DNA of 50,296 nucleotides from Macrostomum lignano (taxonomy: Eukaryota). Under the pieces are notes generated by a model. That model made no database searches, was not told the origin of the DNA, and saw only the letters and a list, made by a program, of their open reading frames with translations. The translations under genes and the position numbers were made by a program. The stretch covers positions 482,925-533,220 of the forward strand of contig NIVC01000572.1 of NCBI GenBank assembly GCA_002269645.1. Direction: 5' to 3'. Shown piece by piece: positions 1-40,796 of this stretch (the first letter of the stretch is position 1; each line of letters opens with the position of its first letter).

Positions 1-1114
1 CCAAATCCCTTAGCTAATGATCCCAAATCCCTTAGCTAATGATCCCAAATCCCTTAGCTAATGATCCCAAATCCCTTTGCTAAGCATCCCAAATCCCTTA
101 GCTAAGCATCCCAAATCCCTTAGCTAATGATCCCAAATCCCTTAGCTAAGCATCCCAAATCCCTTAGCTAAGCATCCCAAATCCCTTAGCAATAACATCC
201 CAAATCTCTTAGCAAAGCATCCCAAATCCCTTAGCTAAGCATCCCAAATCCCTTAGCTAATGATCCCAAATCCCTTAGCTAAGCATCCCAAATCCCTTAG
301 CTAAGCATCCCAAATCCCTTAGCAAAACATCCCAAATCTCTTAGCAAAGCATCCCAAATCCCTTAGCTAAGCATCCCAAATCCCTTAGCTAATGATCCCA
401 AATCCTTAGCTAAGCATCCCAAATCCCTTAGCTAAGCATCCCAAATCCCTTAGCTAATGATCCCAAATCCCTTAGCAAAGCATCCCAAATCCCTTAGCAA
501 AGCATCCCAAATCCCTTAGCTAATGATCCCAAATCCCTTAGCTAAGCATCCCAAATCCCTTAGCTAAGCATCCCAAATCCCTTAGCAAAGCATCCCAAAT
601 CCCTTAGCAAAGCATCCCAAATCCCTTAGCTAATGATCCCAAATCCCTTAGCTAAGCATCCCAAATCCCTTAGCTAAGCATCCCATATCCCTTAGCAAAG
701 CATCCCAAATCCCTTAGCTAATGATCCCAAATCCCTTAGCTAAGCATCCCAAATCCCTTAGCTAAGCATCCCAAATCCCTTAGCAAAGCATCCCAAATCC
801 CTTAGCAAAGCATCCCAAATCCCTTAGCTAATTATCCCAAATCCCTTAGCTAAGCATCCCAAATCCCTTAGCTAAGCATCCCATATCCCTTAGCAAAGCA
901 TCCCAAATCCCTTAGCTAAGCATCCCAAATCCCATAGCAAAGCATCCCAAATCCCTTAGCTAATGATCCCAAATCCCTTAGCTAAGCATCCCAAATCCCT
1001 TAGCTAAGCATCCCAAATCCCTTAGCTAAGCATCCCAAATCCCTTAGCTAAGCATCCCAAATCCCTTAGCAAGCATCCCAAATCCCTTAGCTAAGCATCC
1101 CAAATCCCTTAGCT
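1..1114. repeat. Minisatellite, 22-bp unit (ATCCCAAATCCCTTAGCTAAGC / ...CTAATG)
   Basis: About 50 tandem copies visible; runs off the window start. Confidence 0.97.
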
Positions 1115-1337
1115 GAGCATGGTGACACTTTAGTTCCTTGGCACCAGTTGCCAGCAGTTGAAATGCGAAGTCTTTTGTCAAGTAGTTATGTACGCCTGTG
1201 CCATGAAATATATTTTATGAATTTTATCATTGGAGCGAGGTATTCATGCCTCGCTGTATTTTACAGACATGTATCATCACTGTACTGAGCGTAAAATGAA
1301 CGAAATCACCACGTATTTTTACGTTATCTCAATGAGT

Positions 1338-1693: not shown

Positions 1694-1730
1694 AATGAGT
1701 TAGGGAATGAGGATACGCTTGAGTCTGAAA

Positions 1731-3470
1731 ATTGGATTGGATGGGGTCAGGCAATTGGGTTGGATGGGGTCAGGCAATTGGATTGGATGGGTCAGGCAAT
1801 TGGGTTGGATGGGGTCAAGCAATTGGGTTGGATGGGGTCAGGCAATTGGATTGAATGTGGTCAGGCAATTGGATTGGATGGGGTCAGGCAATTGGATTGA
1901 ATGTGGTCAGGCAATTGGATTGGATGGGGTCAGGCAATTGGGTTGGATGGGGTCAAGCAATTTGGCTGGATGGGGTCAGGCAATTTGGCAGGATGGGGTC
2001 AGGCAATTGGGTTTGATGGGGTCAGGCAATTGGATTGGATGGGGTCAGGCAATTGGGTTGGATGGGGTCAGGCAATTGGATTGAATGTGGTCAGGCAATT
2101 GGATTGGATGGGGTCAGGCAATTTGGCTGGATGGGGTCAGGCAATTTGGCTGGATGGGGTCAGGCAATTTGGCTGGATGGGGTCAGGCAATTGGGTTGGA
2201 TGGGGTCAGGCAATTGGATTGGATGGGGTCAGGCAATTGGATTGGATGGGGTCAGGCAATTGGGTTGGATGGGGTCAGGCAATTGGATTGAATGTTGTCA
2301 GGCAATTGGATTGGATGGGGTCAGGCAATTGGATTGAATGTGGTCAGGCAATTGGATTGGATGGGGTCAGGCAATTGGATTGGATGGGTCAGGCAATTGG
2401 GTTGGATGGGGTCAAGCAATTGGGTTGGATGGGGTCAGGCAATTGGTTGGATGGGGTCAAGCAATTGGGTTGGATGGGGTCAGGCAATTGGGTTGGATGG
2501 GGTCAGGCAATTGGATTGGATGTGGTCAGGCAATTGGATTGAATGTGGTCAGGCAATTGGGTTGGATGGGGTCAGGCAATTTGGCTGGATGGGGTCAGGC
2601 AATTTGGCTGGATGGGGTCAGGCAATTGGGTTGGATGGGGTCAAGCAATTGGATTGGATGGGTCAGGCAATTGGTTGGATGGGGTCAGGCAATTTGGCTG
2701 AATGGGGTCAGGCAATTTGGCTGGATGGGGTCAGGCAATTTGGCTGGATGGGGTCAGGCAATTGGATTGGATGGGGTCAGGTTGGATGGGTCAGGAAATT
2801 TGGCTGGATGGGGTCAGGCAATTTGGCTCGATGGGGTCAGGCAATTGGATTGGATGGGGTCAGGCAATTGGATTGGATGGGGTCAGGCAATTGGATTGAA
2901 TGTTGTCAGGCAATTGGATTGGATGGGGTCAGGCAATTGGGTTGGATGGGGTCAGGCAATTTGGCTGGATGGGGTCAGGCAATTTGGCTGGATGGGGTCA
3001 GGCAATTGGGTTGGATGGGGTCAAGCAATTGGATTGGATGGGGTCAGGCAATTGGGTTGGATGGGGTCAGGCAATTGGATTGAATGTGGTCAGGCAATTG
3101 GATTAGATGGGGTCAGGCAATTGGGTTGGATGGGGTCAGGCAATTTGGCTGGATGGGGTCAGGCAATTTGGCTGGATGGGGTCAGGCAATTTGGCTGGAT
3201 GGGGTCAGGCAATTGGATTGGATGGGGTCAGGTTGGATGGGGTCAGGAAATTTGGCTCGATGGGGTCAGGCAATTGGATTGGATGGGGTCAGGCAATTGG
3301 ATTGGATGGGGTCAGGCAATTGGATTGAATGTGGTCAGGCAATTGGATTGGATGGGGTCAAGCAATTGGGTTGGATGGGGTCAGGCAATTGGATTGAATG
3401 TGGTCAGGCAATTGGATTGAATGTGGTCAGGCAATTGGGTTGGATGGGGTCAGGCAATAGGATTGAATGG
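1731..3470. repeat. Minisatellite, 23-bp unit (GGATTGGATGGGGTCAGGCAATT)
   Basis: About 75 tandem copies; accounts for all ORF-track entries from 1707 to 3630. Confidence 0.97.
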
Positions 3471-3763
3471 TGTCCTTAAACTCCCGATTCAAAGGTTGTT
3501 AATTAATTTTCTCAGATGTATATTTCACTGTGACGAGCCGGCACATCTGGATATATGCGCTATATACAGTATATCTTATTATTACTATAATATAGGTATT
3601 CATTACTTGCGCAGTAAAATGATATGGTGACTACTGTAATGCTAGATGCATTGCTTCGTTTATCTTATTACAAAAACAAATTGTCTTCAACAATTGCCAA
3701 CAGAAAGTTTTTTATCTAATCTCCCTATTGCACAAGCGCGTGCATAAATATCGTTTTATAGCG

Positions 3764-6350: not shown

Positions 6351-8203
6351 ACTAATATATGTTGTTGTATTGCTATTTTGTGTCGAAAAATATACGTCTG
6401 TTTAAAAATGCAATTGCATTTTTATGTTTACGTCAACTACATGTAAATGTGTATGCCAGTGTGCACATTTTTAATTCCCAAGTCGATCATACTTGTATTT
6501 TTTGAGCCAACAAAGCCTAAAAAATTCTTCAAAGTTTTCCTAACTATTGTACAGCACCGCATATGCAGTAGACATATGATACATCTACCATGACTGTCAA
6601 TGTCTGTCAATCCAACCTTATATACATGCTTGTACATGTGCCAAATTGTATTTTTTTAATGTTACATGTAGCACTATAGCTTAGCTACCGATTCATCTTC
6701 ACCCAGCACAACTCCTGGGGAAGAGGTCGGCTTCTTGTTCTAAAGTGACCTTCATTTTTATTATATTTTTTGCGCTCTCAAAAGTCCGACTTACTGGAAC
6801 TCTAAAAAGACCATTGCGTGAGCCCGCATGCGCCTTTCAGCAGTTTAAACAAAAATTCACAGTTCTCATTTATATGAGTGATAAAATCAACGTAAATCCA
6901 TAAAATATCTTGTAAAAGTTACAATTTATTACTTTGCTTTGGGTAAAAATGTGAATTTAATATTTTCATATTCATGGGGAATTTTTAACTTAAGGAGACG
7001 ATGCCAATTTTTAGATCCTTGTTAACTGTTGTTCAACTACATATCCGTGTGCCAATTATTTCAAAGGCTGTATAAATTCTTTAACGGCTAAATGCTGAAT
7101 CAATAAATCAAAGTAATTTGAACCTTATAGTATAACACTTTATGCCAACCTCATCTCATCTGAATCGTCTACTGATTTATTTAAATTCAATTTATTCAGT
7201 TGTCATCACCTTACCTAAAGTAAAGACCAATTTTCTAGCCTCCTAGCTCCAAAGCATAAAGCAAGCACAAAGTAGTTAGCTACTTTGCTAATTAAGCTAT
7301 ATTTAATCCAGGCTTTCTATATTGAAAACTTGAAAATGCATTAAGTATGGATGATGTAGGCCTGATTTTTTAAGTAAAATTTAGAAGCCTGATGGCGATG
7401 CTTTAAAGCAGAAGTTATGAGTATGATTTTTGTTTGTTGCATTATCCTTCTGAATAATTTTCAGACAGTCACTTTAAAATTATTGAAAAAGCTATTGCTA
7501 ATCTAGTAAGCCTATTGTAATTTTTAAACTAGAATTTCATCAACATGTATACTATATTATATATATAGTGATCATCCCATTTGGCATTAATACTGAATAT
7601 TATTTGTTAGTATCTCATAATCTTTTACTATACTCCATTGCCATTTTATAGACTATAAAATCTAATATGAAAAAATAAATTTATAAGTTGCAATTTTGTA
7701 ATAATAAAATATATTAAAATGAAATAATAGATAAAATAAAAAGTTTCAGTAAGGCATAACTGCCATTGAGTTTCACTACTACAAATTTTTTTTTCTTTGA
7801 CCTAATCTATATCCAATCCATAGGTGTACCTAGATTTTTCTTATAATAGTCTGACTACTATGAATATCCATAGTTAATTAATATCCCTAGGCTATAACCT
7901 ATAACTTGATATCAATAATTGAACTTATTACTTATTAATAATGTCTCATTTAATTACCTTAATATATAAGAAGAATGTCTAAACTTGTATTGTTTGAACA
8001 CCTGACCCTAGGGACTTTAGAGTTCCCTTCTTAAAAGCTACTGGCAAAATTTATTCATTTCTATTGCTTTACCACCGTCTGCCGAAGTGGCCACCATGTT
8101 GCTACTATTGCGCGTTCAGGGACGCCAACACGCACAGCCACTTTGCTAGCACTTTCATCACTGCACTTGGTGGCAAGCGTGGAGGTGCTTAGTACGCGGA
8201 GGT

Positions 8204-9991
8204 ATGCACTGCAGTTTGAGCCACCGCGGAACAAGCAGTCCTGCTAATGCGACCAGCCTAGAGAGAGCAGCCGGTATGGCGAGCCGACCCCGCAATTTGG
8301 CAAGCGAGGGAAGAGCTGGAGAGACACCGTTTGAGCAGGCGACCAACACGCGAGGCAGAGGAGGCTCTGCTGCTGGGCCCGATACCAGAGGCCGCGTGGC
8401 CTGGTCGGCTATCAATGCTCTGACAGGGCGAAAGCGGCGCATTCCGCTAAACCTGGCAGGCGACTCTGCGGACGAGCGCAGGAACGAGCTGCGTGAGTTC
8501 TTCGACGCCGTTGTCAACGCGCCGCCACCCCCGCTGCCAGACAGTCTGACGCTGCCGCCGGAGATGTCGTTGCCGGCAAAGGAGAGCTTCAGCCTAGCAC
8601 CAGTCAGCACAGCCGACGTTGTGAGGTTCGCCCAACAGTCACCGGGCGGGAAAGCGCTGGGTCCGGACGAGGTGCCCATCGAGGCGCTGCGCATCCACTG
8701 TGTGGCCAGTGGGGTCGCCAGCGTGATGAACTGCGTGCTTTTCGGTGAGGCGGCACCCAACGAATGGACCACGGCGCACATCGTCGCAGTTCCAAAGAAG
8801 CCGGGCACCACGAGGCTTGAGGAGCACCAAGGCATCTGTCTGCAGTCCTGTGCTGCGAAGTTGTTCAACCGGTTGCTGTTATCGCGGTTGCAGCCCGTGC
8901 TGGATCCGTACCTGCGTCCTGAGCAGAACGGCTTCCGGCCCCATCGCGGCACAGTGACGCAGATCCTGGCTCTTCGGCGAGTCATCGAGAAAGCACGGAT
9001 ACGTCAGTCGATCCTGATTGTTATCTTTATAGATTTCAAGAAGGCATTCGACTCGGTCGTCAGGTCTGTGCTCCCAAAGGTGCTCCGTGCGTACAACGTG
9101 CCAGAGCAGCTGATTTCCGCCATCATGGCGATGTACCGTGATACGAAAGCTGCTGTTTCAACACCAGACGGCCTATCGGACTTCTTTGAGACATTTTCCG
9201 GGGTGCTTCAGGGAGATACGCTTGCGCCGTTCCTGTTCGTTCTGGTGCTTGACTGGGTGCTGCGGACCGCTCTTCCTACCAACGATGACGGCTTTCTGTT
9301 ACGGCGACGCGTCGGTCGACGTCAACCGGAGAGGCGGCTCAGCGTGCTTGGCTACGCCGACGACCTCGCCTTGCTGTCCTCAACTGTCGAGGGCGCCCAG
9401 CGACAACTGGACAAGCTAGATGATGTTGCGGCGAGTGTCGGCCTGGTGGTCAACACGCAGAAGACCATCGTGCTCTGCGTGCCAGACGACATCGAGGCAG
9501 CGATTTTGTGCCGAGGCGCTGATGGACAGGCGACAGAGCTTCCGCGTTGTCAGCAGTTCGTCTACCTCGGCAATCTAGTTCCCGGTGTCCGCGAGGATTT
9601 GCGGCGTCGCCGCGGGCTCGCCTGGGCTGCCTTTCGTTCTGTGAGGGCAGCCCTGCAGTCCGAGGCCTTACCTGACCGCCAGAGGGCGGCGTTGTTCCAG
9701 GCGGTGATCGATACCGTCCTGCTGTACAACGCCGAGTCGCTGACGGAGTCGCTCGAGCAGCAAGTTGACGCGGCGCACGCTGGCCTGCTGCGCGCCGCCT
9801 TCAAAATCGGCGACAAGCGAGTGACCAACGCGGCTTTGTATCGCCGCGCCGGCCTGGTCCGTCCAAGCGACCTGCTGCGCCGTCGGCGACTCCAGCTGGC
9901 AGGCCACATCATCCGTGCCGAGTCGAACTGCCCAGAGCCGGTTCTTCTTCATTCTTCTTCTTCATCTTCGGGTCACGGACATTGTAGCTAG
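8204..9991 (+). CDS. Reverse transcriptase of the RTE-like LINE (N-truncated, C-terminus displaced by the nested insertion)
   Basis: Motifs KALGPDEVP, EQNGFR..R.T..QI..LR...EK, FIDFKKAFDSV, GVLQGDTLAPFLF, YADD, GLVVNTQKT, FVYLG and RRRRLQLAGHIIR. Removing the insertion rejoins CPEP-VQVLLLTLQAPYRRGQERAL* in frame, with the stop at 10397-10399. Confidence 0.9.
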   Translation: MHCSLSHRGTSSPANATSLERAAGMASRPRNLASEGRAGETPFEQATNTRGRGGSAAGPDTRGRVAWSAINALTGRKRRIPLNLAGDSADERRNELREFFDAVVNAPPPPLPDSLTLPPEMSLPAKESFSLAPVSTADVVRFAQQSPGGKALGPDEVPIEALRIHCVASGVASVMNCVLFGEAAPNEWTTAHIVAVPKKPGTTRLEEHQGICLQSCAAKLFNRLLLSRLQPVLDPYLRPEQNGFRPHRGTVTQILALRRVIEKARIRQSILIVIFIDFKKAFDSVVRSVLPKVLRAYNVPEQLISAIMAMYRDTKAAVSTPDGLSDFFETFSGVLQGDTLAPFLFVLVLDWVLRTALPTNDDGFLLRRRVGRRQPERRLSVLGYADDLALLSSTVEGAQRQLDKLDDVAASVGLVVNTQKTIVLCVPDDIEAAILCRGADGQATELPRCQQFVYLGNLVPGVREDLRRRRGLAWAAFRSVRAALQSEALPDRQRAALFQAVIDTVLLYNAESLTESLEQQVDAAHAGLLRAAFKIGDKRVTNAALYRRAGLVRPSDLLRRRRLQLAGHIIRAESNCPEPVLLHSSSSSSGHGHCS

Positions 9992-10326
9992 ACGATGTAG
10001 CTAATAGGACCGGGTGCCTAGCACCATGCAGTCGGGGCGCTGACTCCGCGTGGGCGGACAGTAGATGGTAAAATCCAATTTGCGGCCTGCGGCGGGTGGC
10101 CAGAAAGCAAGGGAACCCGAGTCCCGGTGCGCAGGGCTCCTCCGCAGACCGACTTACGCTGTAAAAAGCGCCACCCACCGCCAACCTAATGGTGAGGGAC
10201 AGCTCCAGGCTGCATACCCGGAGGTGAGACCAATTCGTCACCCCGTCGATGGCAGGGACGGACGGAGCTCCTGCCACATTGGCGGGGTGTCCAGGGGCGC
10301 GACGTGGATGCTGGTCTCGTGCCACC
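9943..10326 (-). mobile_element. 384-bp non-autonomous retroposon headed by an HDV-like ribozyme
   Basis: Exact 12-bp TSD CCCAGAGCCGGT at 9931-9942 and 10327-10338; (GAA)n-type 3' tail on the minus strand; no RT and no Pol III A/B boxes seen. Confidence 0.9.
10226..10326 (-). ncRNA. HDV-like (CPEB3-type) self-cleaving ribozyme
   Basis: Minus strand: P1 GGUGGC/GCCCCU (G1.U wobble, one U-C mismatch); P2 GAGACCA/UGGUCUC; P3 GCA/CGC (one A-C mismatch); L3 UCCACGU; P1.1 CC/GG; P4 CACCCCG/CGGGGUG with inner stem UGGCAGG/CCUGCCA; J4/2 ACGAAU with the catalytic C at 10237. Confidence 0.85.
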
Positions 10327-10772
10327 CCCAGAGCCGGTGCAGGTGCTGCTGCTGACGCTGCAGGCACCCTACCGGCGGGGACAGGAGCGCGCCCTGTGAC
10401 GCTAACCTGCGTATTCTATTGTTGTTGTTGTTGTTGTATTGCTTTACCCTTCAAGCATAAAATCAATGGCTCTAATAGTCTTTTAGTGGCCAATAATATT
10501 AAACACAGGAACTGTATATCTTCTTGCAACTTTCCATAGCCATACCTGCTGCTATGGTAGAGTCAAATATATTATCAAATAATTATACTCTTTAAATACG
10601 AATAATAGGCCTATATCAGTTCTCTAAATTAAAACTGCAATTAGCTATGGAGTTATATCATTATGCTTAGATTTTATTTTTGTATAAAAATGTGTCATCT
10701 ATAAGCAGACAAAGCCATTATTGGGCCTGACAGATTCTATTGAAAATAATACAATGATTTCAGCCAACAGTC

Positions 10773-12654: not shown

Positions 12655-14770
12655 TTGCGCCTATAACGCACTGAGAATCGCCCATAACACACTGAACATC
12701 GCCATAACACACTGAGAATCGTTCATAACAGATAATCGCCCATAGGCCATAACACACTGAGAATCGTTCATAACACACAGATATAATCGCCCATAGGCCA
12801 TAGCACACTGAGAATCGTTCATAACACACAGATAATCGCCCATAGGCCATAGCACACTGAGAATCGTTCATAACACACAGATAATCGCCCATAGGCCATA
12901 GCACACTGAGAATCGTTCATAACACACAGATAATCGCCCATAGGCCTTACACACTGAGAATCGTTCATAACACACAGATAATCGCCCATAGGCCATAGCA
13001 CACTGAGAATCGTTCATAACACACAGATAATCGCCCATAGGCCATAGCACACTGAGAATCGTTCATAACACACAGATAATCGCCCATAGGCCATAACACA
13101 CTGAGAATCGTTCATAACACACAGATAATCGCCCATAGGCCATAGCACACTGAGAATCGTTCATAACACACAGATAATCGCCCATAGGCCATAACACACT
13201 GAGAATCGTTCATAACACACAGATAATCGCCCATAGGCCATAGCACACTGAGAATCGTTCATAACACACAGATAATCGCCCATAGGCCATAGCACACTGA
13301 GAATCGTTCATAACACACAGATGATCGCCCATAGGCCATAACACACTGAGAATCGTTCATAACACACAGATAATCGCCCATAGGCCATAGCACACTGAGA
13401 ATCGTTCATAACACACAGATAATCGCCCATAGGCCATAACACACTGAGAATCGTTCATAACACACAGATAATCGCCCATAGGCCATAACACACTGAGAAT
13501 CGTTCATAACACACAGATAATCGCCCATAGGCCATAGCACACTGAGAATCGTTCATAACACACAGATAATCGCCCATAGGCCATAGCACACTGAGAATCG
13601 TTCATAACACACAGATAATCGCCCATAGGCCATAACACACTGAGAATCGTTCATAACACACAGATAATCGCCCATAGACCATAACACACTGAGAATCGTT
13701 CATAACACACAGATAATCGCCCATAGGCCATAGCACACTGAGAATCGTTCATAACACACAGATAATCGCCCATAGGCCATAACACACTGAGAATCGTTCA
13801 TAACACACAGATAATCGCCCATAGGCCATAGCACACTGAGAATCGTTCATAACACACAGATAATCGCCCATAGGCCATAACACACTGAGAATCGTTCATA
13901 ACACACAGATAATCGCCCATAGGCCATAACACACTGAGAATCGTTCATAACACAGATAATCGCCCATAGGCCATAACACACTGAGAATCGTTCATAACAC
14001 AGATAATCGCCTATAGGCCATAACACACTGAGAATCGTCCATAACACACTGAGAATCGTCCATAACACACAGATAATCGCCCATAGGCCATAACACACTG
14101 AGAATCGTTCATAACACACAGATAATCGCCCATAGGCCATAGCACACTGAGAATCGTTCATAACACACAGATAATCGCCCATAGGCCATAACACACTGAG
14201 AATCGTTCATAACACACAGATAATCGCCCATAGGCCATAACACACTGAGAATCGTTCATAACACACAGATAATCGCCCATAGGCCATAACACACTGAGAA
14301 TCGTTCATAACACAGATAATCGCCCATAACACACATATATAATCGCCCATAGGCCATAGCACACTGAGAATCGTTCATAACACACAGATAATCGCCCATA
14401 GGCCATAACACACTGAGAATCGTTCATAACAGATAATCGCCCATAGGCCATAACACACTGAGAATCGTTCATAACACACAGATAATCGCCCATAGGCCAT
14501 AACACACTGAGAATCGTTCATAACACACAGATAATCGCCCATAGGCCATAACACACTGAGAATCGTTCATAACACAGATAATCGCCCATAGGCCATAACA
14601 CACTGAGAATCGTTCATAACACAGATAATCGCCTATAGGCCATAACACACGGAGAATCGTTCATAACACAGATAATCGCCCATAGGCCATAACACACTGA
14701 GAATCGTTCATAACACAGATAATCGCCTATAGGCCATAACACACGGAGAATCGTCCATAACACACAGATA
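12655..14770. repeat. Minisatellite, 49-bp unit (ATAACACACAGATAATCGCCCATAGGCCATAGCACACTGAGAATCGTTC)
   Basis: About 42 copies; the unit is a dimer of related 22- and 27-bp subunits. Confidence 0.97.
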
Positions 14771-15244
14771 ATGACAATTTTGACGACCCCGAGAATTGAT
14801 TATCCATTAATTCGATTTGCGGAAGCCAAAATTTCAATTTTTTTCCAGTGCTAATTTTCAGTTAAAAATATTTGTAATAATTATTTGTGCAGTTGCTACC
14901 GTGCTCCATAAATGCAGATATCAAAACGATTTGATTTTTTTCCTGTAAAGTGTTTTTTTCTAATGCTATTTAGTATTCACCCATCATTTAAAATGACGAC
15001 CCTGTGATGGAGCCGCAGGCTTTGATCAAGTATTATCTAGAACATTTCATTTCCTAGCTTTTCATTCCAGTTACAAGTTAAATCAGCTTGTCACCCATTA
15101 AATATAATATATTTGAAATCTGTATCCAAGATACCTGCATTAAACCGGAAAATATTTTATTTAATTCAATAGTAGCTTGCAAACTATCTTTGCTGATTTT
15201 CAGTACATGTACACTGCCCTAACAACTGCCAAGGCTACTCAGAA

Positions 15245-16685
15245 CCTGGAGTGCCAAGGGATCAATTCAGCATCTGGAGTGCCAAGGCAATTTAGAATCT
15301 GGGAATTCAGCACCACTTGGAGTACCAAGGCAATTCAGCACCTGGAGTGCCAAGGGAATTCAGCACTTGGAGTGCCAAGGGATTCAGCACCACTTGGAGT
15401 ACTAAGGCAATTCAGCACCTGGAGTGCCAAGGGAATTCAGCACTTGGAGTGCCAAGGCAATTCAGCACCTGGAGTGCCAAGGGTATTCAGCACCTGGAGT
15501 ACCAAGGCAATTCAGCATCTGGAGTGCCAAGGAAATTTAGAATCTGGAGTGCCAAGGCAACTCAGCATCTGGAGTGCCAAGGAAATTTAGAATCTGGAGT
15601 GCCAAGGCAATTCAGCATCTGGAGTGCCAAGGAAATTTAGAATCTGGAGTGCCAAGGCAATTCAGCATCTGGAGTGCCAAGGAAATTTAGAATCTGGAGT
15701 GCCAAGGCAACTCAGCATCTGGAGTGCCAAGGAAATTTAGAATCTGGAGTGCCAAGGCAATTCAGCATCTGGAGTGCCAAGGAAATTTAGAATCTGGAGT
15801 GCCAAGGCAATTCAGCATCTGGAGTGCCAAGGAAATTTAGAATCTGGAGTGCCAGGGCAATTTAGCATCTGGAGTGCCAAGGCAATTCAGCATCTGGAGT
15901 GCCAAGGAAATTTAGCATCTGGAGTGCCAAGGCAATTCAGCATCTGGAGTGCCAAGGAAATTTAGAATCTGGAGTGCCAAGGCAATTCAGCATCTGGAGT
16001 GCCAAGGAAATTTAGAATCTGGAGTGCCAGGGCAATTTAGCATCTGGAGTGCCAAGGCAATTCAGCATCTGGAGTGCCAAGGAAATTTAGAATCTGGAGT
16101 GCCAAGGCAATTCAGCATCTGGAGTGCCAAGGAAATTTAGAATCTGGAGTGCCAGGGCAATTTAGCATCTGGAGTGCCAAGGCAATTCAGCATCTGGAGT
16201 GCCAAGGAAATTTAGCATCTGGAGTGCCAAGGCAATTCAGCATCTGGAGTGCCAAGGAAATTTAGAATCTGGAGTGCCAAGGCAATTCAGCATCTGGAGT
16301 GCCAAGGAAATTTAGAATCTGGAGTGCCAGGGCAATTTAGCATCTGGAGTGCCAAGGCAATTCAGCATCTGGAGTGCCAAGGAAATTTAGCATCTGGAGT
16401 GCCAAGGCAATTCAGCATCTGGAGTGCCAAGGAAATTTAGAATCTGGAGTGCCAAGGCAATTCAGCATCTGGAGTGCCAAGGCAATTTAGCATCTGGAGT
16501 GCCAAGGCAATTCAGCATCTGGAGTGCCAAGGCAATTTAGAATCTGGAGTGCCAAGGGAATTCAGCATCTGGAGTGCCAAGGCAATTTAGAATCTGGAGT
16601 GCCAAGGCAATTCAGCATCTGGAGTGCCAAGGCAATTTAGAATCTGGAGTGCCAAGGGAATTCAACACCACTTGGAGTGCCAAGT
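15245..16685. repeat. Minisatellite, 25-bp unit (GGAGTGCCAAGGCAATTCAGCATCT) with higher-order structure
   Basis: About 55 copies with alternating variants. Confidence 0.97.
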
Positions 16686-18036: not shown

Positions 18037-19323
18037 ATGCGGCTGGCGAGGCAAGTAGAAATTGCGGCCACCCCGGCTGCCGCTGAACGGAGGCCGGACC
18101 TTCTTTTCGTTCTCGTCGGCGAAGCGGATCTGCGCGGCAACGGGAGAACGCCGAAAGCATATATACAGTATAATATATATGTACATGGTAAATTTCAGAT
18201 CTCACATTCTAATCGTTAATCCTTTTAAATGCCTATGCCAGATTCCACACCCATTTCAAATATCCCATATTTCATTCAGATCCCACATCCCAATGTAAAA
18301 TCCCATATCCCAATGTCAGATCCCAAATCATAATTTCAGATCCCAAATCCCAATTTCCGATCCCAAATCCCAATTTCCGATCCCACATCCCAATTTCAGA
18401 TCCCAAATCCCAATTTCAGATCCCACATCCCAATTTCAGATCCCAAATCCCAATTTCAGATTCTAAATCCCAATTTCAGATCCCACATCCCAATTTCAGA
18501 TCCCAAATCCCAATTTCAGATCCCACATCCCAATTTCAGATCCCAAATCCCAATTTCAGATTCTAAATCCCAATTTCAGATCCCACATCCCAATTTCAGA
18601 TCCCAAATCCCAATTTCAGATCCTAAATCCCAATTTCAGATCCCACATCCCAATTACAGATCCCGAATCCCAATGTCAGATCCCACATCCCAGTGTCAGA
18701 TCCCACCACATCCCAGTGTCAGATCCCACATCCGTGTCAGACCACACATTCCAAGTTCAGATCCCACATCCCAATGTCACCTGCACAAGCTGCTGTTCCG
18801 AGTTGGCAGCCGAGTCGCCAGATGCAGCAGGCCAGGGCCTGTTGTGCAGGGCATCCAGAGCGGCCTGGGCCGAGCTGTGAGTTTCGAACAAGCAGAAGCC
18901 GAGCAGACCGCGCGGAGCCACCGCCGGCTGCTGCTGCTGCCCCTGCAACAAGCGGCAGTTAATAATCGGACCGAATCTTCCCAGCACCTGTTGCAGAGCC
19001 TCCTCTGTGATGCCGAACGGCAGGCAGGAGATGTGCAGCTTGCAGTTTCTGGTCTCCTCGCTGCGCAGGCGGGCGAAGGCCACTTTAATAGTTTTCCTGC
19101 CCAGCTGGTGGCCGTTCAGGTTGTCTATGGCCCGGGCCGCGGCCTCGTGCGAGTTGTAGTCGCAGAAGCCGTAGCCGTAGCTGTAGCCTGTGGCGTTGTT
19201 GCGGCAGATCTTCACCGACTTCACGCCCGGAGCCAGAGAGTCGAACAGCTTATGGAGCTCGTCGTCTCTAAGCTCCTGCGGCAGGTAGTTCACGATTAGG
19301 TTCGTGTCGGAGTACTGGGCCAT
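17866..19323 (-). CDS. Sex-lethal/ELAV-family RNA-binding protein: two RRMs plus a Gln-rich tail, about 268 aa
   Basis: Exon 19323-18781 contains TNLIVNYLPQ...TGYSYGYGFCDY...IKVAFAR...KLHISCLP and ends at CAG|GTGACA. Exon 18129-17866 starts IRFADENEKK, carries polyQ and ends at the stop. The phase-0 join gives LVQ-IRFADE, completing RRM2. An upstream in-frame ATG at 19386 is possible. Confidence 0.88.
18300..18776. repeat. Intronic minisatellite, 20-bp unit (AGATCCCAAATCCCAATTTC)
   Basis: About 22 copies inside the RRM gene intron. Confidence 0.95.
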
Positions 19324-19489
19324 GCCTCTGATTGGCTGCGTAGTCAACAGTGAGTGAGCCTTTAGCAGCGAGGATGGCGACAGCATGAAATGTTGGATAG
19401 AATAGAGCAGCTTGCTTACTAGTGTGATTTGATTACCTGTGGCATCTCAGTTTTGGGATCAGTGTTCAAGATTACAGAAGAGACTATGG

Positions 19490-20795
19490 GATTACGGTTT
19501 GGGATTAGGGATCAATGATTACGGTTTTGGAATCTATGATTACGATTTGGGATCTATGATTACGGTTTGGGATCTATGATTACGATTTGGGATCTATGAT
19601 TACGGTTTTGGGATCTATGATTACGGTTTTGGAATCTATGATTACGGTTTGGGATCTATGATTATGGTTTTGGGATCTATGATTACGGTTTTGGGATCTA
19701 TGATTACGGTTTGGAATTTATGATTACGGTTTTGGGATCTATGATTACGGTTTGGGATCTATGATTATGGTTTTGGGATCTATGATTACGATTTGGGATC
19801 TATGATTACGGTTTTGGGATCTATGATTACGGTTTGGGATCTATGATTACGATTTGGGATCTATGATTACGGTTTTGGGATCTATGATTACGGTTTTGGA
19901 ATCTATGATTACGGTTTGGGATCTATGATTATGGTTTTGGGATCTATGATTACGGTTTGGGATCTATGATTACGGTTTGGAATTTATGATTACGGTTTTG
20001 GAATCTATGATTACGGTTTGGGATCTATGATTATGGTTTTGGGATCTATGATTACGATTTGGGATCTATGATTACGGTTTTGGGATCTATGATTACGGTT
20101 TTGGAATCTATGATTACGGTTTGGGATCTATGATTATGGTTTTGGGATCTATGATTACGGTTTTGGGATCTATGATTACGGTTTGGAATTTATGATTACG
20201 GTTTTGGGATCTATGATTACGGTTTGGGATCTATGATTATGGTTTTGGGATCTATGATTACGATTTGGGATCTATGATTACGGTTTTGGGATCTATGATT
20301 ACGGTTTGGGATCTATGATTACGATTTGGGATCTATGATTACGGTTTTGGGATCTATGATTACGGTTTTGGAATCTATGATTACGGTTTGGGATCTATGA
20401 TTATGGTTTTGGGATCTATGATTACGGTTTTGGGATCTATGATTACGGTTTGGAATTTATGATTACGGTTTTGGGATCTATGATTACGGTTTGGGATCTA
20501 TGATTATGGTTTTGGGATCTATGATTACGGTTTTGGGATCTATGATTACGGTTTGGGATCTATGATTACGATTTGGAATCTATGATTATGGTTTTGGGAT
20601 CTGGGATTACGATTTGGGATTATGGTTTTGGAATCAGGGATTATGGTTTTGGGATCTGGGATTACAGTGTTGAGATTTTATATTACGGTTTTAGGATCTA
20701 AGATTGCGGCTTTGGGATCTGGGATTACAGTTTTGGGATCTGTGATTACGGTTTAGGGGTCTGGGATTACGGTTTTGGGGATTAAGATTGCGGTT
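19490..20795. repeat. Minisatellite, 20/21-bp unit (GGGATCTATGATTACGGTTT(T))
   Basis: About 60 copies between ORC2 and the RRM gene. Confidence 0.96.
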
Positions 20796-21247
20796 TTGGT
20801 ACATTGGATTATTTTGGGGATTTTTGGTCCAGAACCCGAAGATACTAACCTAGATCAGCCTCTGAGCCTCTTTAAGTGTAAAAAATTAGTAAACACGTAA
20901 AGAAAACGACATGACAGAATGAAAATTTGATAAGTTCAGGCGTAAAAGTAATAACTGCGGCTCGTTTTTGTAATAAAAATGCTTACAACTATTGCACAAT
21001 AGATTAATATTATTACTATTTACGTGATAGCACCAACATGAAAAAAAAACAAATTACGTTAGAAAATAAAAATTCTATGCTCGAGAACATTATTGGGCAG
21101 CAACAATTTTAGCATTAAAAAGCTGCATGAATGGTTAGCAGACTACTCATAGTAGCAGCTGCAAAATATTAAATACAAAGTGATATATAATGCGGCTATG
21201 GGGTCAAACAGGCGACTTCCTAATTTTCAAGGGGCGATTCGAAAGGG

Positions 21248-21544: not shown

Positions 21545-23592
21545 TCAGTCGCACTCGTCGCCGAACGCAGCCAGGAACTGCACCAGGGTGTCGGCAGGCA
21601 GCGGCACCAGCGCAGAGTCGCCGGCCTGGCCGCGGCCGTCGAATTTCAGCCTGACGAGGCCGTGGTCGCGGAACTCGCGGAGGTGAGCCTGCAGAGTGAG
21701 CTCGGAGGTGACCAACATGCCGTCCCGGCAGGCCGTGTAAACCTCATCCAGCGGCCAGGGCTCACCGGGCCGCTCCAGCTGCCGCCTGGCCAGCATGACG
21801 AACAGCGACCTGGCGTTCTGCGTCAGCGAGGCCATGAGGTGCCGCAGGCTGGACAGCTGCAGCGCGACCGACACTTCGCCGCCGATGCCAACGGCGCCAG
21901 AACCGGCGCCGGCGGTTGTCGACTCGACGGCCCGGCCGGTGTAGGCGGCGCTGGCAGGCAATTCCTCGATATAGGGGCGCAGCGGCTTGGGCAACTGGCA
22001 CCACAGGCAGGCCATGCTGGTGAGCTGGCCGCGGTCCCACAGCAACTGGCACAGCCGGTGATCCAGACTGGCGATCATTCGGACAGTCGGTGATGAGACC
22101 AGCGCCGTGATGGCCTCCGCGGCTTTGTCCGTGCGCAGCTGCGGCCCGTCAAGGCTGTGGAACTGAGGGCGGCGTATTGGGACTGGACTATGGGGATCTG
22201 AGAGATTTGGGAATCCAGTATGGGGATCTGGGAGATTTGGGAATTCAGTATGGGGATCTGAGAGATTTGGGAAGACAGAATGGGATCTAGGAGATTTGGG
22301 AATGCAGTATGGGGATCTGAGAGGTTTGGGAATTCAGTATGGGGATCTGAGAGATTTGGGAATGCAGTATGGGGATCTGGGAGATTCGGGAATTCAGTAT
22401 GGGGATCTGAGAGATTTGGGAATGCAGTATGGGGATCTGGGAGATTCGGGAATTCAGTATGGGGATCTGAGAGATTTGGGAATGCAGTATGGGGATCTGA
22501 GAGATTTGGGAATGCAGTATGGGGATCTGAGAGATTTGGGAATTCAGTATGGGGATCTGAGAGATTTGGGAATGCAGTATGGGGATCTGGGAGATTCGGG
22601 AATTCAGTATGGGGATCTGAGAGATTTGGGAATGCAGTATGGGGATCTGGGAGATTCGGGAATTCAGTATGGGGATCTGAGAGATTTGGGAATGCAGTAT
22701 GGGGATCTGAGAGATTTGGGAATTCAGTATGGGGATCTGAGAGATTTGGGAATTCAGTATGGGGATCTGAGAGATTTGGGAATGCAGTATGGGGATCTGA
22801 GAGATTTGGGAATTCAGTATGGGGATCTGGGAGATTTGGGAATGCAGTATGGGGATCTGAGAGATTTGGGAATTCAGTATGGGGATCTGGGAGATTTGGG
22901 AATCCAGTATAGGGATCTAGATTAAAGACCCGAGATCATGAGGGGTTGGTAGGTTGGGATTAAGCCTGAGGGTTCAAGTTTGTGAGGTTGACAGAGCTGA
23001 GGTCAACCAGTCTCACCACAATGTACAGAGTGAGGCCGACAGTCTCCAGAGTAGAAGCAATCAGCCTGGCCATGTCAGGCAGCGACTTGGCAGAGCTGGG
23101 CGTCACCTCGCCGATCAGTTCCTCAACAAGCGCCGTCAGGATGGCCTTGGGACCGGCCTCGGGATGGAAGCCGTCAATCTCGGCGCAGAGCTGATCGCCG
23201 AGGCAGGCAGACTTGAACTGGCGCAGCAGGTGCCGCTTGGACCCCAGGCCATACACTAGCAGGCTGAATCCGCCCACGCGAAGGCGGCGCGACCAGTCAG
23301 CAAAGTAGATCCGGGCGCACTCGGCCTCGGCTGCGGTTGGCGAGCTGGCCGCAGCTTCGGTGGCTTCGATGTACTCTTCGGCCAGGCGCAGCGAAGTCTC
23401 CTCGTCCGGCCGGTTGGCCAGGGAGGCGAGCGTGGCTGGGCGGGATCTACTTGCCGATTTATTCTTGTTATTCTTGTACTTTTTATTATTATAATTCGAC
23501 TTTAACCTGGGCGCCGATGCGGCATTGAAATATCGATCAGTTTCTTCGGCAGCTTGGCGAATTGCATCATCTCGGTTGGCTTCTAGGGGCAT
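21545..23592 (-). CDS. ORC2: Origin recognition complex subunit 2, about 397 aa
   Basis: Exons 23592-23017 and 22162-21545 (phase 0, GTGAGA...CTCAG). Motifs GFSLLVYGLGSKR.LL..F, LYIV|FHSLDGP.LR, IASLDH...LLWD and TSELTLQAHLREFRDH.LV match ORC2. Confidence 0.93.
22190..22920. repeat. Intronic minisatellite, 30-bp unit (GAGATTTGGGAATGCAGTATGGGGATCTGA)
   Basis: About 24 copies filling the ORC2 intron. Confidence 0.96.
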
Positions 23593-25296
23593 TTTGATTG
23601 GCTGCGGGTGTATGGTTAGGTTGGAGCTGTGTAGCATTGGGGAGATAACTTACGAGTATAAGGCTCAAACAGAACTCAGAACTATAATAGGCCTCTATTT
23701 TAATTTTACAGGTTATAAATTTCTATGCTGCAGGACTCTTAGTACTACTACGAGTATAATTTTTACTATTTTTAGTACAACTACGTAGTATACTGTGAAT
23801 AGTATTACTATTATTATTAGTATCCCTAAGCTGCATCACTTAACTCCTATCTTTTATTATGGTATATCTTGTATATGTGGATTTTATTCTTAAAATATAT
23901 GCTTCTCTCTCTATTTAATTGTTAATATATTCTTTTAGCATACATGCACAACACCTGGCTAAGCTGGCCTAGATAAGTGGATAGCCAAGACAGATATGTT
24001 GCAAAACTGATTAACTAAGAACAAAAATGGTACAGATAGTACATAGGACAAAAAGAATAAATGGGATTAATATATAAAGTGAGAAAAAACATGGAAAATG
24101 AAAAATGGGTCTAAAAACTATCATTCCAATGGTACAATGATGACAATTTTCTATATCTATAGATTAAGATAAGATACTCCCAATTTGGCTTATCTAATAT
24201 ATTTCTAAGCTTTATAACTTTGTATATTAATATTATATATAATAATATATATACATATATAAATGTAGATTATTATGTATTCAATGTTTTGTTTTTTGAA
24301 TTATTAAAAAAATACTCATATATTGATTTTAAGTTCGCCCTGGCTTATATGATCATATAAAAAAGCTTATTTATTGTAACAGGTAGTATTCTGTGTCTTG
24401 TCGATAACAAAGAATTGAACTTGAAGCACAGCATTCCTGGACCAAGGCTACTGCTGTCTATAGCCCAACTAAGGCAATGGCCATGCCTTTGGGCCAATAG
24501 ATGTAGGCAGGAGAAAAGTGAAGCAAGGGCCTCCACTGTCTCTCCTTTTTATTTAAAACACTGAAGAACAGGCACATAGGAATGAAAATTCTTATAAGCT
24601 ACACAAAACAAATGCAAATTATATATCAAGTTTTAGGTGCAGCCATCCTTTGCAAATATGACTATATTTTATGCAGCTTATTTTTATGACTCTCATGAAT
24701 TTAAATTTACAAATAAAAGATTTGGTAGAAAATAAATAATTAGTTTATCTTTACAAGTATAAACTACAGCCCTCATTGACTACATAGCTGCAATGATTGC
24801 ATTTATATTTTGCAAATGAGTCACAGACAATTAGCAATAGATAAAATAACTATCAACCCTTGTATGCAATAGCATTTATTAATTGAGTCTACAATGGTTT
24901 ATGTTAATTGATGATAACAAACTGATCAAACTCTAAAGTATATAAATTGGCTAGATAACAAAGTATCTTATCTTTAAAATAGATAATAAATATAGGCCTA
25001 ACTTATAAGATGACAAAGTTGTAAATATAAGAATAAGATAATACTTGTGTCTAGAAACTATTATAGCCTACTCATTGGCCTAGGCCTATTATTACTAACT
25101 TATTTACTAACAAAAGTAAATGCTAGTAACTTATTTTTAATTTACCATTTTTTCATTTTATTTAGTTTAAATTAAGTTAATTTAATTTACTTTTGTTGTT
25201 TTGTACCAAAATGTATAAATGTTAGGCCCTAGTTGCATATGATTATATAATCAAACCAGCTAATAAAGGCCACAATACAAGGATTAGGCCTAGCCA

Positions 25297-35307: not shown

Positions 35308-35350
35308 TTTTAATTCTGATTATGATACTTTTTCTGGGAATGTTAACTTG

Positions 35351-37030: not shown

Positions 37031-38098
37031 CCCTTTACCTCACTTAACTTAATTCTTGGTACACCTATTTTGCATTCTATAATGATATGGTTAATAAATT
37101 CATTTTTGCAAAAATTAATACATACATAATTAGAAATAATCAATGTATGTCATATAGCAACCCATTTTTAATGAATTTTTGTTTCTTTATTTATTCGGAT
37201 ATAATGAAATTTCTAGAAAGCCTTAATATTCAGACTAGGCCCATCTGATTTTTATATAATCTTATCTACTATACTTGTTTACTAAAGGTATGTTGCAAAA
37301 TTGACCCCTTCAGAAAGGTATAAAAGGGCAAAAAAAGTAATATTGAAAGAGGAAAGAAAAGATCATATATGCCCAAACCTTATTAATTTATGCTAGCTAT
37401 GCAACTTTGTTTCAACAAAGATGTACTTTCTTTGTTATTGAATTTTTCTCCTTCTGTTGTCCCTTTTTTCTGTTTTCTTTCCAACTCCATTATAAACCAA
37501 GTTTTTATCTAGAGGGTATGATGTCATATCTAGAATTAGGGTATAATTTTGAAGTTTTAAATAATAACTTGCACAAAAAACTTAATCATTTTTAAGAGGC
37601 AGTTTTGAAATTTTGGGTGTTTTACATGTCTGTTTGCAGAGACCTTGGCTAAAAAAACTTTGAAAGAAATTAATGTAGTTAATAAAACTTATTTATGCTG
37701 GCATTTTCATATAAAGTCAAAGTGTAAATGGGTTATGATACAAATTCTCTTATTTAGTATAATATGCCATTAGCAAAATTGAATAAGTATTATTACTTCT
37801 TTTTATACTTTTACTAGAAGTCTAGCGGGTATAGATAAAATCCACTGAACTATGTGCTGACATGACCTTTTCTGCTTGTAACTATTCTTAAGCCTTTCAT
37901 CTATATCATAGTTGATGTAGTTAGTGTACATGTATATGTATGACAGACAGTTGCTATAACCTGGCTTGGCATTAGTTTTATGATGCTGGGTACCTAAATT
38001 ATGAAAGTTTTCTAATTGCTACAGATGGCTAGAAGTTCGTCTGCGTGGTCAGTAGTTTAGCCTAGTCCAATTTCCCCCACTGCAGCCAATTTTGCATC

Positions 38099-40735: not shown

Positions 40736-40796
40736 CCCGCAATAGCTGCACTGTAGTGCTGAATTTTTGTGTTGCTGCCGCTGCCCCGTCAACCGC

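What the first reader, a model, noticed from the sequence alone, without database searches (positions are those of the whole stretch)
10226..10326. Complete HDV-like self-cleaving ribozyme whose G1 is exactly the first base of an inserted element
Seen on the minus strand: GGUGGC-AC-GAGACCA-GCA-UCCACGU-CGC-GCCCCU-GG-A-CACCCCG...CGGGGUG-ACGAAU-UGGUCUC. This gives every element of the nested double pseudoknot in the correct order: P1 with a G1.U wobble, a 7-bp P2, P3/L3 nearly identical to CPEB3 (GCG UUCACGU CGC), P1.1, a long P4 and J4/2 CGAA with the catalytic C at 10237. The predicted cleavage-site G (10326) coincides with the TSD boundary. Established: HDV-like ribozymes trim the 5' ends of R2, RTE and Ingi/L1Tc retroposon RNAs. 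Inference: this copy was retroposed from a ribozyme-cleaved RNA. The A-C mismatch in P3 looks like CpG decay (GCG to GCA) and P1 has a U-C mismatch, so this copy may be weakened. Target-derived Gs (10329-10325) offer an alternative mismatch-free P1, GGGGGU/GCCCCU.
Basis: partly seen in the sequence, partly recalled or inferred. Interest (0 to 1): 0.92.

Follow-up and report, generated by a model that had tools for sequence, protein, structure and literature searches.

The report
Ribozyme-headed short retroposon, nested insertion
A 384-base mobile-element copy has landed inside another retrotransposon, and its first ~100 bases have the full layout of an HDV-like self-cleaving RNA, which fits the known way promoter-less retrotransposons trim their own 5' ends; it is a clean new example of a known mechanism.

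Summary
It satisfies a strict HDV-like descriptor, and nothing else in the window does. About 0.03 such matches are expected per window from shuffles.

The motif is the 5' end of an independent 384-bp insertion (10326->9943, minus strand). This insertion is flanked by a perfect 12-bp target-site duplication and ends in a (GAA)n-like tail. It sits antisense inside a 5'-truncated RTE-like retrotransposon (8074-10436, plus strand). Cutting it out restores that element's conserved C-terminal motif.

The best explanation is a promoter-less, non-autonomous non-LTR retroposon whose RNA 5' end is set by ribozyme self-cleavage.

Caveats:
- G1 is ambiguous by 3 nt. The register starting at 10329 gives a mismatch-free P1.
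- P3 carries an A-C mismatch.
- Rfam models and CPEB3-derived covariance models give no significant hit.
- No second copy was found in any collection I could reach, so covariation and 5'-end uniformity remain untested.
- Catalysis is untested.

This is a new member of a known kind (compare L1Tc/NARTc, R2 SIDEs, RTE and Baggins ribozymes).

The parts
10327..10338 (.). Upstream copy of the 12-bp target-site duplication of the inner element (minus strand ACCGGCTCTGGG). Its last three G (10329-10327) could instead be the first three bases of the element RNA (register B).
   Evidence: Perfect direct repeat D5; sequence read.
10226..10326 (-). HDV-like ribozyme candidate, 101 nt. P1 5' strand 10326-10321; J1/2 10320-10319; P2 5' 10318-10312; P3 5' 10311-10309; L3 10308-10302; P3 3' 10301-10299; P1 3' 10298-10293; P1.1 G10292/G10291 pairing with C10306/C10307; P4 10289-10239; J4/2 10238-10233 with the putative catalytic C10237; P2 3' 10232-10226.
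   Evidence: Sequence. It is the only strict-descriptor match in the window. Shuffle rate is 0.3-0.9 per Mb. P4 is predicted in the MFE fold.
9970..10225 (-). Non-coding body of the 384-bp inner element. It has no ORF with relatives and no tRNA, 5S or 7SL head.
   Evidence: Six-frame protein search found nothing. phmmer against 1.84 billion representatives gave only one weak low-complexity hit. No tRNA. No Rfam family. No Pfam domain.
9985..10003 (-). Small hairpin, UAGCUA-CAUCGUC-UAGCUA, about 15 nt upstream of the tail. It is a candidate recognition element for the reverse transcriptase that copies the RNA. This role is inferred.
   Evidence: Sequence; the stem appears in the MFE fold of the whole element.
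9943..9969 (-). 3' simple-repeat tail of the inner element, GAAGATGAAGAAGAAGAATGAAGAAGA.
   Evidence: Sequence. It abuts the downstream TSD copy.
9931..9942 (.). Downstream copy of the 12-bp target-site duplication of the inner element.
   Evidence: D5.
8074..10436 (+). Host element: a 5'-truncated RTE-like non-LTR retrotransposon. Its RT ORF runs 8204-9991 as interrupted. It has a (TTG)5 tail at 10422-10436 and is itself flanked by the 12-bp TSD TATTGCTTTACC at 8062-8073 and 10437-10448. The inner element interrupts it at 9942/10339.
   Evidence: RVT_1 E=3.1e-28. Relatives are 59-84% identical and many carry the Exo_endo_phos endonuclease domain. TSD D4. The ORF is restored by excision.

Best explanation
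The 384 bp at 10326->9943 (minus strand) are a copy of a short, non-coding, promoter-less non-LTR retroposon whose first ~101 nt encode an HDV-like self-cleaving ribozyme.

Proposed mechanism:
1. A source copy is transcribed as part of a longer read-through transcript.
2. The nested double-pseudoknot ribozyme cuts immediately 5' of its own G1, removing all upstream RNA.
3. The resulting RNA (ribozyme, ~255-nt body with a 3' hairpin, then a (GAA)n-like tail) is taken in trans by the endonuclease and reverse transcriptase of an autonomous LINE, probably of the RTE type.
4. It is copied by target-primed reverse transcription to its very 5' end.

Here it inserted, with a 12-bp target-site duplication, into the 3' end of the ORF of a resident RTE-like element, in antisense orientation.

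Shown: the motif, its rarity, the nested insertion, the TSD, the tail, and the coincidence of the ribozyme start with the insertion boundary.

Inferred: catalysis, read-through transcription, and mobilisation in trans.

The true RNA 5' end is either G10326 (12-bp TSD, P1 with one U-C mismatch) or G10329 (3-nt GGG microhomology at the 5' junction, mismatch-free P1).
For: - The exact motif is present.
- It is the only strict-descriptor hit in the window. Shuffles predict ~0.03 hits per window.
- P4 is a well-formed 7+8-bp hairpin.
- The core from the last P3 5'-strand base through L3 and the P3 3' strand into the P1 3' strand matches 12 of 15 bases of the mouse Cpeb3 ribozyme primer GTTCACGTCGCGGCC, which lies 18 nt from that ribozyme's cleavage site.
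- There is a perfect 12-bp direct repeat at both ends.
- Excision restores the RTE C-terminal motif shared with P0001-P0018, whereas the interrupted reading frame runs into unrelated sequence.
- The element has a simple-repeat tail.
- It has no coding capacity and no Pol III head.
- The literature says HDV-like ribozymes process the 5' ends of R2, L1Tc/NARTc, RTE and Baggins elements and of some non-autonomous derivatives, and that such elements lack their own promoters (PMC6765202; PMC3383444 and PMC3414825).
- The literature also says 5' junctions formed after cleavage at the element's 5' end use chance microhomologies (PMC3774820).
Against: - No Rfam family, HDV-like or otherwise relevant, matches, even at E<=10 on a 601-nt slice.
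- Covariance models built from CPEB3 give only 9.7 bits, E=1.5, or no hit at all.
- P3 has an A-C mismatch next to L3, and register A has a U-C mismatch in P1, so this copy may be slow or dead.
- Only one copy is available, so there is no covariation, no proof that family members share this 5' end, and no autonomous partner.
- The RTE relatives I fetched have no such motif at their 5' ends.
- The MFE z-score of the motif is unremarkable (-0.82), although MFE folding cannot represent the pseudoknots.
Confidence: 0.75

Rival explanations
1. The fold is a true descendant of an HDV-like ribozyme and did define the 5' end of the parental RNA, but this copy, and possibly its whole subfamily, is catalytically dead or very slow because of the P3 A-C mismatch and the P1 U-C mismatch. 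It would then be a fossil rather than a working ribozyme.
For: A10309-C10301 closes L3, next to the active site. In register A, P1 has an internal mismatch and is weaker (-6.6 kcal/mol). The copy lies antisense in a dead-ended, truncated RTE, with no evident promoter driving the minus strand.
Against: Both TSDs are perfect and the host ORF is open over ~600 codons. The insertion is therefore young and few post-insertion mutations are expected, which suggests the parent had the same sequence and still produced an RNA ending at G1. Register B removes the P1 mismatch.
Confidence: 0.15
2. The ribozyme-like motif is a chance arrangement in GC-rich DNA. The 5' end of the 384-bp retroposon would then be set by something else, such as an internal promoter or a transcription start.
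For: There is no Rfam hit and no significant covariance-model hit. A loose descriptor hits ~8 other loci in the window. GC-rich sequence pairs easily (z = -0.82). No covariation is available.
Against: The strict descriptor expects ~0.004 hits within this GC-rich element and ~0.03 per window. The hit would also have to start within 3 nt of the insertion boundary on the correct strand. The L3/P3/P1' and J4/2 sequences resemble a validated ribozyme. No tRNA, 5S or 7SL promoter head is present.
Confidence: 0.05
3. The 384-bp segment is not a retroposed RNA copy. It could be another kind of insertion, such as a MITE-like DNA element, or a rearrangement or template switch made while the host RTE was being copied.
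For: Only one copy was seen. A single exact 12-mer repeat within 2.7 kb is not vanishingly rare on its own (roughly 0.2 expected from length alone; my estimate, not simulated).
Against: The repeat brackets the exact segment whose removal restores a conserved protein motif. One end is a simple-repeat tail and the other is not, so there are no terminal inverted repeats (sequence). TSD length matches the host RTE's own 12-bp TSD. Template switching would not duplicate 12 bp of target.
Confidence: 0.05

Closest known systems
L1Tc / NARTc (and ingi/RIME) of trypanosomatids, with the L1TcRz HDV-like ribozyme in the first 77 nt
   Same: An HDV-like ribozyme forms the very 5' end of both an autonomous LINE and its short non-autonomous partner. 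The ribozyme releases the element RNA from longer co-transcripts. The elements are dispersed and have TSDs, usually of 12 bp (PMC3383444; PMC6765202).
   Different: In trypanosomatids the same 77 nt also act as an internal promoter (Pr77). The host is a protist with polycistronic transcription. Here the host is an animal-like genome, the tail is (GAA)n-like, no partner LINE was identified, and the ribozyme is ~101 nt with a long P4.
R2 SIDEs (short internally deleted, non-autonomous R2 and R2/R1 elements of Drosophila)
   Same: Short non-coding derivatives that keep the 5' HDV-like ribozyme and the 3' end needed for TPRT, and are mobilised in trans (PMC3414825).
   Different: R2 and its SIDEs insert site-specifically in 28S rDNA and are co-transcribed with rRNA. 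This element inserted into an arbitrary site, inside another transposon, with a 12-bp TSD typical of APE-type endonucleases.
[quoted passage not shown] 2011, as summarised in PMC6765202)
   Same: Promoter-less elements, read-through transcription, and 5' processing by an HDV-like ribozyme. RTE-type elements end in short simple repeats, as this one does.
   Different: Those are autonomous, protein-coding elements. This one is 384 bp and non-coding. The RTE relatives of the host element fetched here have no such motif at their 5' ends. I could not read the primary paper.
Mammalian CPEB3 intronic ribozyme
   Same: Same topology. The segment from the last P3 5'-strand base through L3 and the P3 3' strand into the P1 3' strand is nearly the same: 12 of 15 bases against the mouse primer GTTCACGTCGCGGCC. 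The J4/2 CGAAU motif also matches, but that comparison is from memory.
   Different: CPEB3 is a single-copy, conserved intronic element with a short P4. P2 and P4 sequences are unrelated. CPEB3-based covariance models score the candidate at 9.7 bits, E=1.5, or not at all, and Rfam's model does not hit. It is not a member of that family. [quoted passage not shown]
Twister-variant ribozymes at the 5' end of Perere-3/SR3 (RTE clade) in Schistosoma mansoni
   Same: The same biological role: a 5' self-cleaving ribozyme in an APE-type, TSD-generating non-LTR element of a flatworm (PMC8501958). The closest named relatives of the host RTE here are from the flatworm Macrostomum lignano.
   Different: A different ribozyme class (twister, not HDV-like). 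That paper states that no S. mansoni non-LTR element had previously been linked to a ribozyme.

Membership tests
HDV-like self-cleaving ribozymes (structural class) | Nested double pseudoknot with elements in the order P1-J1/2-P2-P3-L3-P3'-P1'-P1.1-P4-J4/2-P2' | tested here: met
   My own descriptor scan finds the site in loose and strict form. The definition is from PMC4908430.
HDV-like self-cleaving ribozymes (structural class) | The cleavage site is the first nucleotide of P1, a G forming a G.U wobble with the last base of the P1 3' strand | tested here: met
   G10326.U10293 in register A, or G10329.U10293 in register B. Which register is used cannot be decided from one copy.
HDV-like self-cleaving ribozymes (structural class) | Three-base-pair P3 closing a 7-8-nt L3 | tested here: inconclusive
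   G10311-C10299 and C10310-G10300 pair, but A10309-C10301 is a mismatch. L3 is the 7-nt UCCACGU.
HDV-like self-cleaving ribozymes (structural class) | P1.1: two pairs between L3 and the bases just 3' of P1 | tested here: met
   C10307/C10306 pair with G10291/G10292.
HDV-like self-cleaving ribozymes (structural class) | Catalytic cytosine in J4/2 (C-N-R-A context) just before the P2 3' strand | tested here: met
   C10237 in A-CGAA-U, followed by UGGUCUC.
HDV-like self-cleaving ribozymes (structural class) | Helices supported by compensatory changes among relatives | not testable with these tools
   No second copy was found in the window, in the protein collections, in JGI metagenomes (one chance bacterial hit), in IMG/VR or in GTDB genomes.
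HDV-like self-cleaving ribozymes (structural class) | Mg2+-dependent self-scission abolished by mutating the catalytic C | not testable with these tools
   This needs an in vitro transcription and cleavage assay.
Curated Rfam HDV-type families (HDV_ribozyme, CPEB3_ribozyme, drz-Agam and others) | A covariance-model score at or above the gathering threshold, or at least a significant E-value | tested here: not met
   No hit at gathering thresholds in the whole window. No HDV-type hit at E<=10 in 10000-10600. CPEB3-derived models R1 and R2 gave no hit and 9.7 bits (E=1.5) respectively. These models cannot encode pseudoknots and are specific to the P2 and P4 sequences of their families.
Ribozyme-terminated non-LTR retroposons (as L1Tc/NARTc, R2/SIDE, RTE) | An insertion made by TPRT: target-site duplication and a 3' tail | tested here: met
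   Perfect 12-bp TSD, a (GAA)n-like tail, and excision that restores the host ORF motif.
Ribozyme-terminated non-LTR retroposons (as L1Tc/NARTc, R2/SIDE, RTE) | The ribozyme cleavage site coincides with the 5' end of full-length copies | tested here: met
   G1 (register A) is the first base after the TSD. Register B lies 3 nt upstream, within GGG shared by the TSD and the element. This rests on one copy only.
Ribozyme-terminated non-LTR retroposons (as L1Tc/NARTc, R2/SIDE, RTE) | Many copies with the same downstream sequence and different upstream flanks, plus an autonomous partner sharing the 5' and/or 3' ends | not testable with these tools
The host ORC2-like exon has no relative in the protein collection. 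The RT ORF is not on record.
Classical Pol III SINEs | A tRNA-, 5S- or 7SL-derived head with an internal promoter | tested here: not met
   ARAGORN finds no tRNA in the window. No Rfam tRNA, 5S or 7SL hit over the element.

The most novel reading that the evidence does not exclude
This copy may represent an undescribed and recently active family of HDV-ribozyme-capped, non-coding mini-retroposons in an animal lineage absent from current protein collections. The nearest named relatives of its host RTE element are from the free-living flatworm Macrostomum. In flatworms, transposon-associated ribozymes known so far are hammerhead and twister types. The element's catalytic core is close to that of the mammalian CPEB3 ribozyme. 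It could therefore inform whether such cores arise repeatedly by convergence or spread with retrotransposons.
Probability: 0.4. Interest if true: 0.5.

Novelty: new member of a known kind. Interest (0 to 1): 0.4.

Why it matters
If confirmed, this is a tidy natural example of how a promoter-less retroposon gets a defined 5' end. A single nested insertion shows the ribozyme start, the TSD and the tail together, and an interrupted host ORF proves the boundaries. It would add a non-autonomous, HDV-ribozyme-headed family in a lineage where such ribozymes have not been reported in the literature I could search. It also shows that curated covariance models miss this class, so genome annotation needs structure descriptors as well. 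It does not change the understanding of the mechanism, which is established for R2, L1Tc/NARTc, RTE and Baggins.

Tried and rejected
1. My first reading was that the RT ORF lies on the plus strand, so the motif looked like an antisense feature in the 3' UTR of one RTE element. I rejected this once the inner 12-bp TSD and the ORF restoration showed a separate minus-strand insertion.
2. Rfam at gathering thresholds and at E<=10 gave nothing relevant.
3. The loose descriptor was not discriminating and I replaced it with a strict one plus shuffles.
4. Searches for more copies all failed or gave chance hits:
   - blastn of the window and of fetched loci;
   - a concatenated six-frame protein query;
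   - phmmer of the 152-aa read-through ORF against 1.84 billion representatives, which gave one weak low-complexity hit;
   - a core pattern with a variable P4 gap in JGI metagenomes, which gave one hit in a GC-rich bacterial-type contig lacking P1 and P2;
   - IMG/VR, with no hit for the first pattern and one chance hit in a GC-rich viral contig (IMG/VR) lacking P1 and J4/2 for the second;
   - GTDB genomes, with no hit.
5. I looked for the ribozyme at the 5' ends of three near-full-length RTE relatives (L001-L003) and found none. Two of them (L001, L002) start almost at the ORF, so the host RTE lineage is not the obvious partner.
6. CPEB3-derived covariance models were not significant.
7. 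Organism identification failed. The RT ORF is not on record, and the ORC2-like exon finds no relatives. The Macrostomum lignano link rests only on transposon RT similarity and may reflect transposon relatedness rather than host identity.
8. Ruminski 2011 and Webb 2009 are not held in the library.

Full report
**The sequence**

Mapped onto the HDV-like topology it gives:
- P1, 10326-10321 with 10298-10293: a G.U wobble at the base, four Watson-Crick pairs and one U-C mismatch.
- J1/2: AC.
- P2: 7 Watson-Crick pairs, 10318-10312 with 10232-10226.
- P3: G-C, C-G and an A-C mismatch, 10311-10309 with 10301-10299.
- L3: the 7-nt UCCACGU.
- P1.1: C10307/C10306 with G10291/G10292.
- P4: 10289-10239. 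The MFE fold predicts a 7-bp stem, an internal loop and an 8-bp stem.
- J4/2: ACGAAU, with C10237 in the catalytic-cytosine position.

The class is defined by this nested double pseudoknot, with cleavage at the first nucleotide of P1 (PMC4908430).

**The surroundings**

The only long ORF nearby is on the opposite (plus) strand. ORF 8204-9991 is a reverse transcriptase (RVT_1, E=3.1e-28). Its relatives are RTE-type elements with an Exo_endo_phos endonuclease domain. They include UniRef entries from Macrostomum lignano and ~3.3-kb metagenome contigs.

The GC-rich block 8074-10436 ends in (TTG)5 and is flanked by TATTGCTTTACC at 8062-8073 and 10437-10448 (D4). It is therefore a 5'-truncated RTE-like insertion on the plus strand.

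Inside it, a second perfect 12-bp direct repeat, CCCAGAGCCGGT, lies at 9931-9942 and 10327-10338 (D5). It brackets 384 bp. Read on the minus strand, those 384 bp start with the ribozyme motif and end in GAAGATGAAGAAGAAGAATGAAGAAGA.

Deleting those 384 bp and one repeat copy makes the RT frame read ...AESNCPEPVQVLLLTLQAPYRRGQERAL*. This aligns with ...AESYCPQPVQEVLLLTLQAPYRRGQ... in the relatives. The interrupted frame instead runs into unrelated ...VLLHSSSSSSGHGHCS*. The 384 bp are therefore a later, independent, minus-strand insertion with a TSD and a simple-repeat tail, which is the signature of target-primed reverse transcription. Both TSDs are perfect and the host ORF is open over ~600 codons, so both events look recent.

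**Chance**

A loose descriptor matched about eight other loci in the window, mostly in tandem repeats, so it is uninformative.

A strict descriptor matched only this site on either strand. It required G1.U, P1 of 6-7 bp with at most 1 mismatch, P2 of at least 7 Watson-Crick pairs, P3 with at most 1 mismatch, L3 of 7-8 nt, a 2-bp P1.1, P4 of at least 6 bp, and J4/2 CNRA. Dinucleotide-preserving shuffles gave 12 hits in 40.2 Mb at whole-window composition and 43 hits in 47.3 Mb at the composition of the GC-rich element. That is about 0.03 expected per window and about 0.004 within the element.

This figure leaves out two further points. The hit begins within 0-3 nt of an independently defined insertion boundary on the correct strand. 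Its core also resembles a validated ribozyme: the 15 bases from the last P3 5'-strand base through L3 and the P3 3' strand into the P1 3' strand match 12 of 15 bases of the mouse Cpeb3 ribozyme primer GTTCACGTCGCGGCC, which lies 18 nt from that ribozyme's cleavage site.

**The exact 5' end**

The TSD ends in GGG on the element's strand and the element begins with GG. Two models give the same DNA:
- An RNA beginning at G10326, joined without microhomology.
- An RNA beginning at G10329 (GGGGGUGGC...), joined through 3 nt of microhomology.

Register B gives a mismatch-free P1, GGGGGU/GCCCCU, at -9.4 kcal/mol. Register A gives -6.6 kcal/mol. Register B also gives a 5-nt J1/2. Microhomology-mediated 5' junctions are what R2 work reports when cleavage is at the element's own 5' end (PMC3774820). 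One copy cannot decide between the registers. Either way the ribozyme marks the 5' end.

**What could not be shown**

No Rfam family matches, at gathering thresholds or at E<=10 on a 601-nt slice. Covariance models I built from the CPEB3 ribozyme rank the site first in one version, but at only 9.7 bits, E=1.5, and miss it in the other. I took the human CPEB3 sequence from memory and the mouse variant from the primer. These models cannot encode pseudoknots and are dominated by family-specific P2 and P4 sequence. The element is therefore not a CPEB3-family member, and the negative result says little about the structural class.

No second copy could be found:
- Not in the window.
- Not through six-frame protein queries.
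- Not by pattern scans of JGI metagenomes (one chance hit in a GC-rich bacterial-type contig), IMG/VR or GTDB genomes.

Covariation, uniformity of 5' ends and the autonomous partner are therefore untested. Three RTE relatives of the host element have no such motif at their 5' ends.

The host organism is unresolved. The window carries animal-type genes (RRM/ELAV-like, ORC2, Na/Ca exchanger). The ORC2-like exon finds no relative in the protein collection.

**The mismatches**

CpG observed/expected is 0.87 in the insert and 1.07 in the host element, and the insertion is young. The mismatch may belong to the master copy or be a single recent change. It may slow this copy or kill it.

**Mechanism and comparison with known systems**

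The best explanation is the established one for promoter-less non-LTR elements. The element is transcribed by read-through. An HDV-like ribozyme at its 5' end cleaves itself free. The RNA is then copied by TPRT (PMC6765202). Here the RNA is non-coding, with no ORF relatives, no Pfam domain and no tRNA, 5S or 7SL head. It must therefore be mobilised in trans.

The closest analogues are NARTc next to L1Tc, which has a ribozyme in its first 77 nt and 12-bp TSDs, and the R2 SIDEs. The simple-repeat tail, and a 12-bp TSD equal to that of the host RTE, point to an RTE-type partner. That is an inference.

In flatworms, the transposon-linked ribozymes described so far are hammerhead (Sm-alpha) and twister variants (Perere-3). 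A search for Macrostomum together with ribozyme found nothing relevant.

**Verdict**

This is a new member of a known kind and of moderate interest.

Noticed in passing
window 8074-10436 (+), TSD 8062-8073 / 10437-10448: The host of the finding is itself a young, 5'-truncated RTE-like retrotransposon with a (TTG)5 tail and a perfect 12-bp TSD. Compared with its relatives it lacks one codon just after the inner insertion site (PVQ-V versus PVQEV) and about 30 codons before the stop (RRGQ|...|RAL*).
   Followed up: partly
window 1-1120, 1730-3474, 12701-14772, 15227-16664, 19508-20799, 22189-22918, 35350-37045, 39970-40701, 42215-43189, 49064-50296 and others: A very high density of 20-50-bp minisatellite arrays and (GACA)n/(AGAC)n tracts lies between GC-rich (~60%) exon-like blocks and AT-rich (27-35% GC) unique sequence. 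This produces many long spurious repeat ORFs.
   Followed up: no
window 18757-19386 (-), 22960-23637 (-), 40767-44860 (+): Host gene fragments are present: an RRM/ELAV-like protein, an ORC2 RecA-like domain and a Na/Ca-exchanger (NCKX/NCLX-like). The ORC2-like exon found no relative in the word-indexed search of the 5.8-billion-protein collection, so the source species seems unrepresented there. The Macrostomum link comes only from transposon RT similarity.
   Followed up: partly
window 27293-27220 (-), 26725-26621 (-), 11758-11669 (-), 40917-40973 (+): Loose HDV-like descriptor matches with G.U-rich or mismatched helices. None passes the strict descriptor. They look like chance matches.
   Followed up: partly
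L001 1-240 and 3380-3641; L002 1-130: The metagenome contigs that carry near-full-length RTE relatives start almost directly at the ORF (ATGCCGCGACCTCC...), with essentially no 5' UTR. L001 ends in a (TTG)n tail like the host element here. L002 is preceded by a 17-nt tandem repeat.
   Followed up: no
window 9978-10003 (+): A tandem 13-nt near-repeat, GACATTGTAGCTA/GACGATGTAGCTA (D6), forms the UAGCUA...UAGCUA hairpin just upstream of the inner element's tail on the minus strand. It is a possible 3' recognition structure.
   Followed up: no
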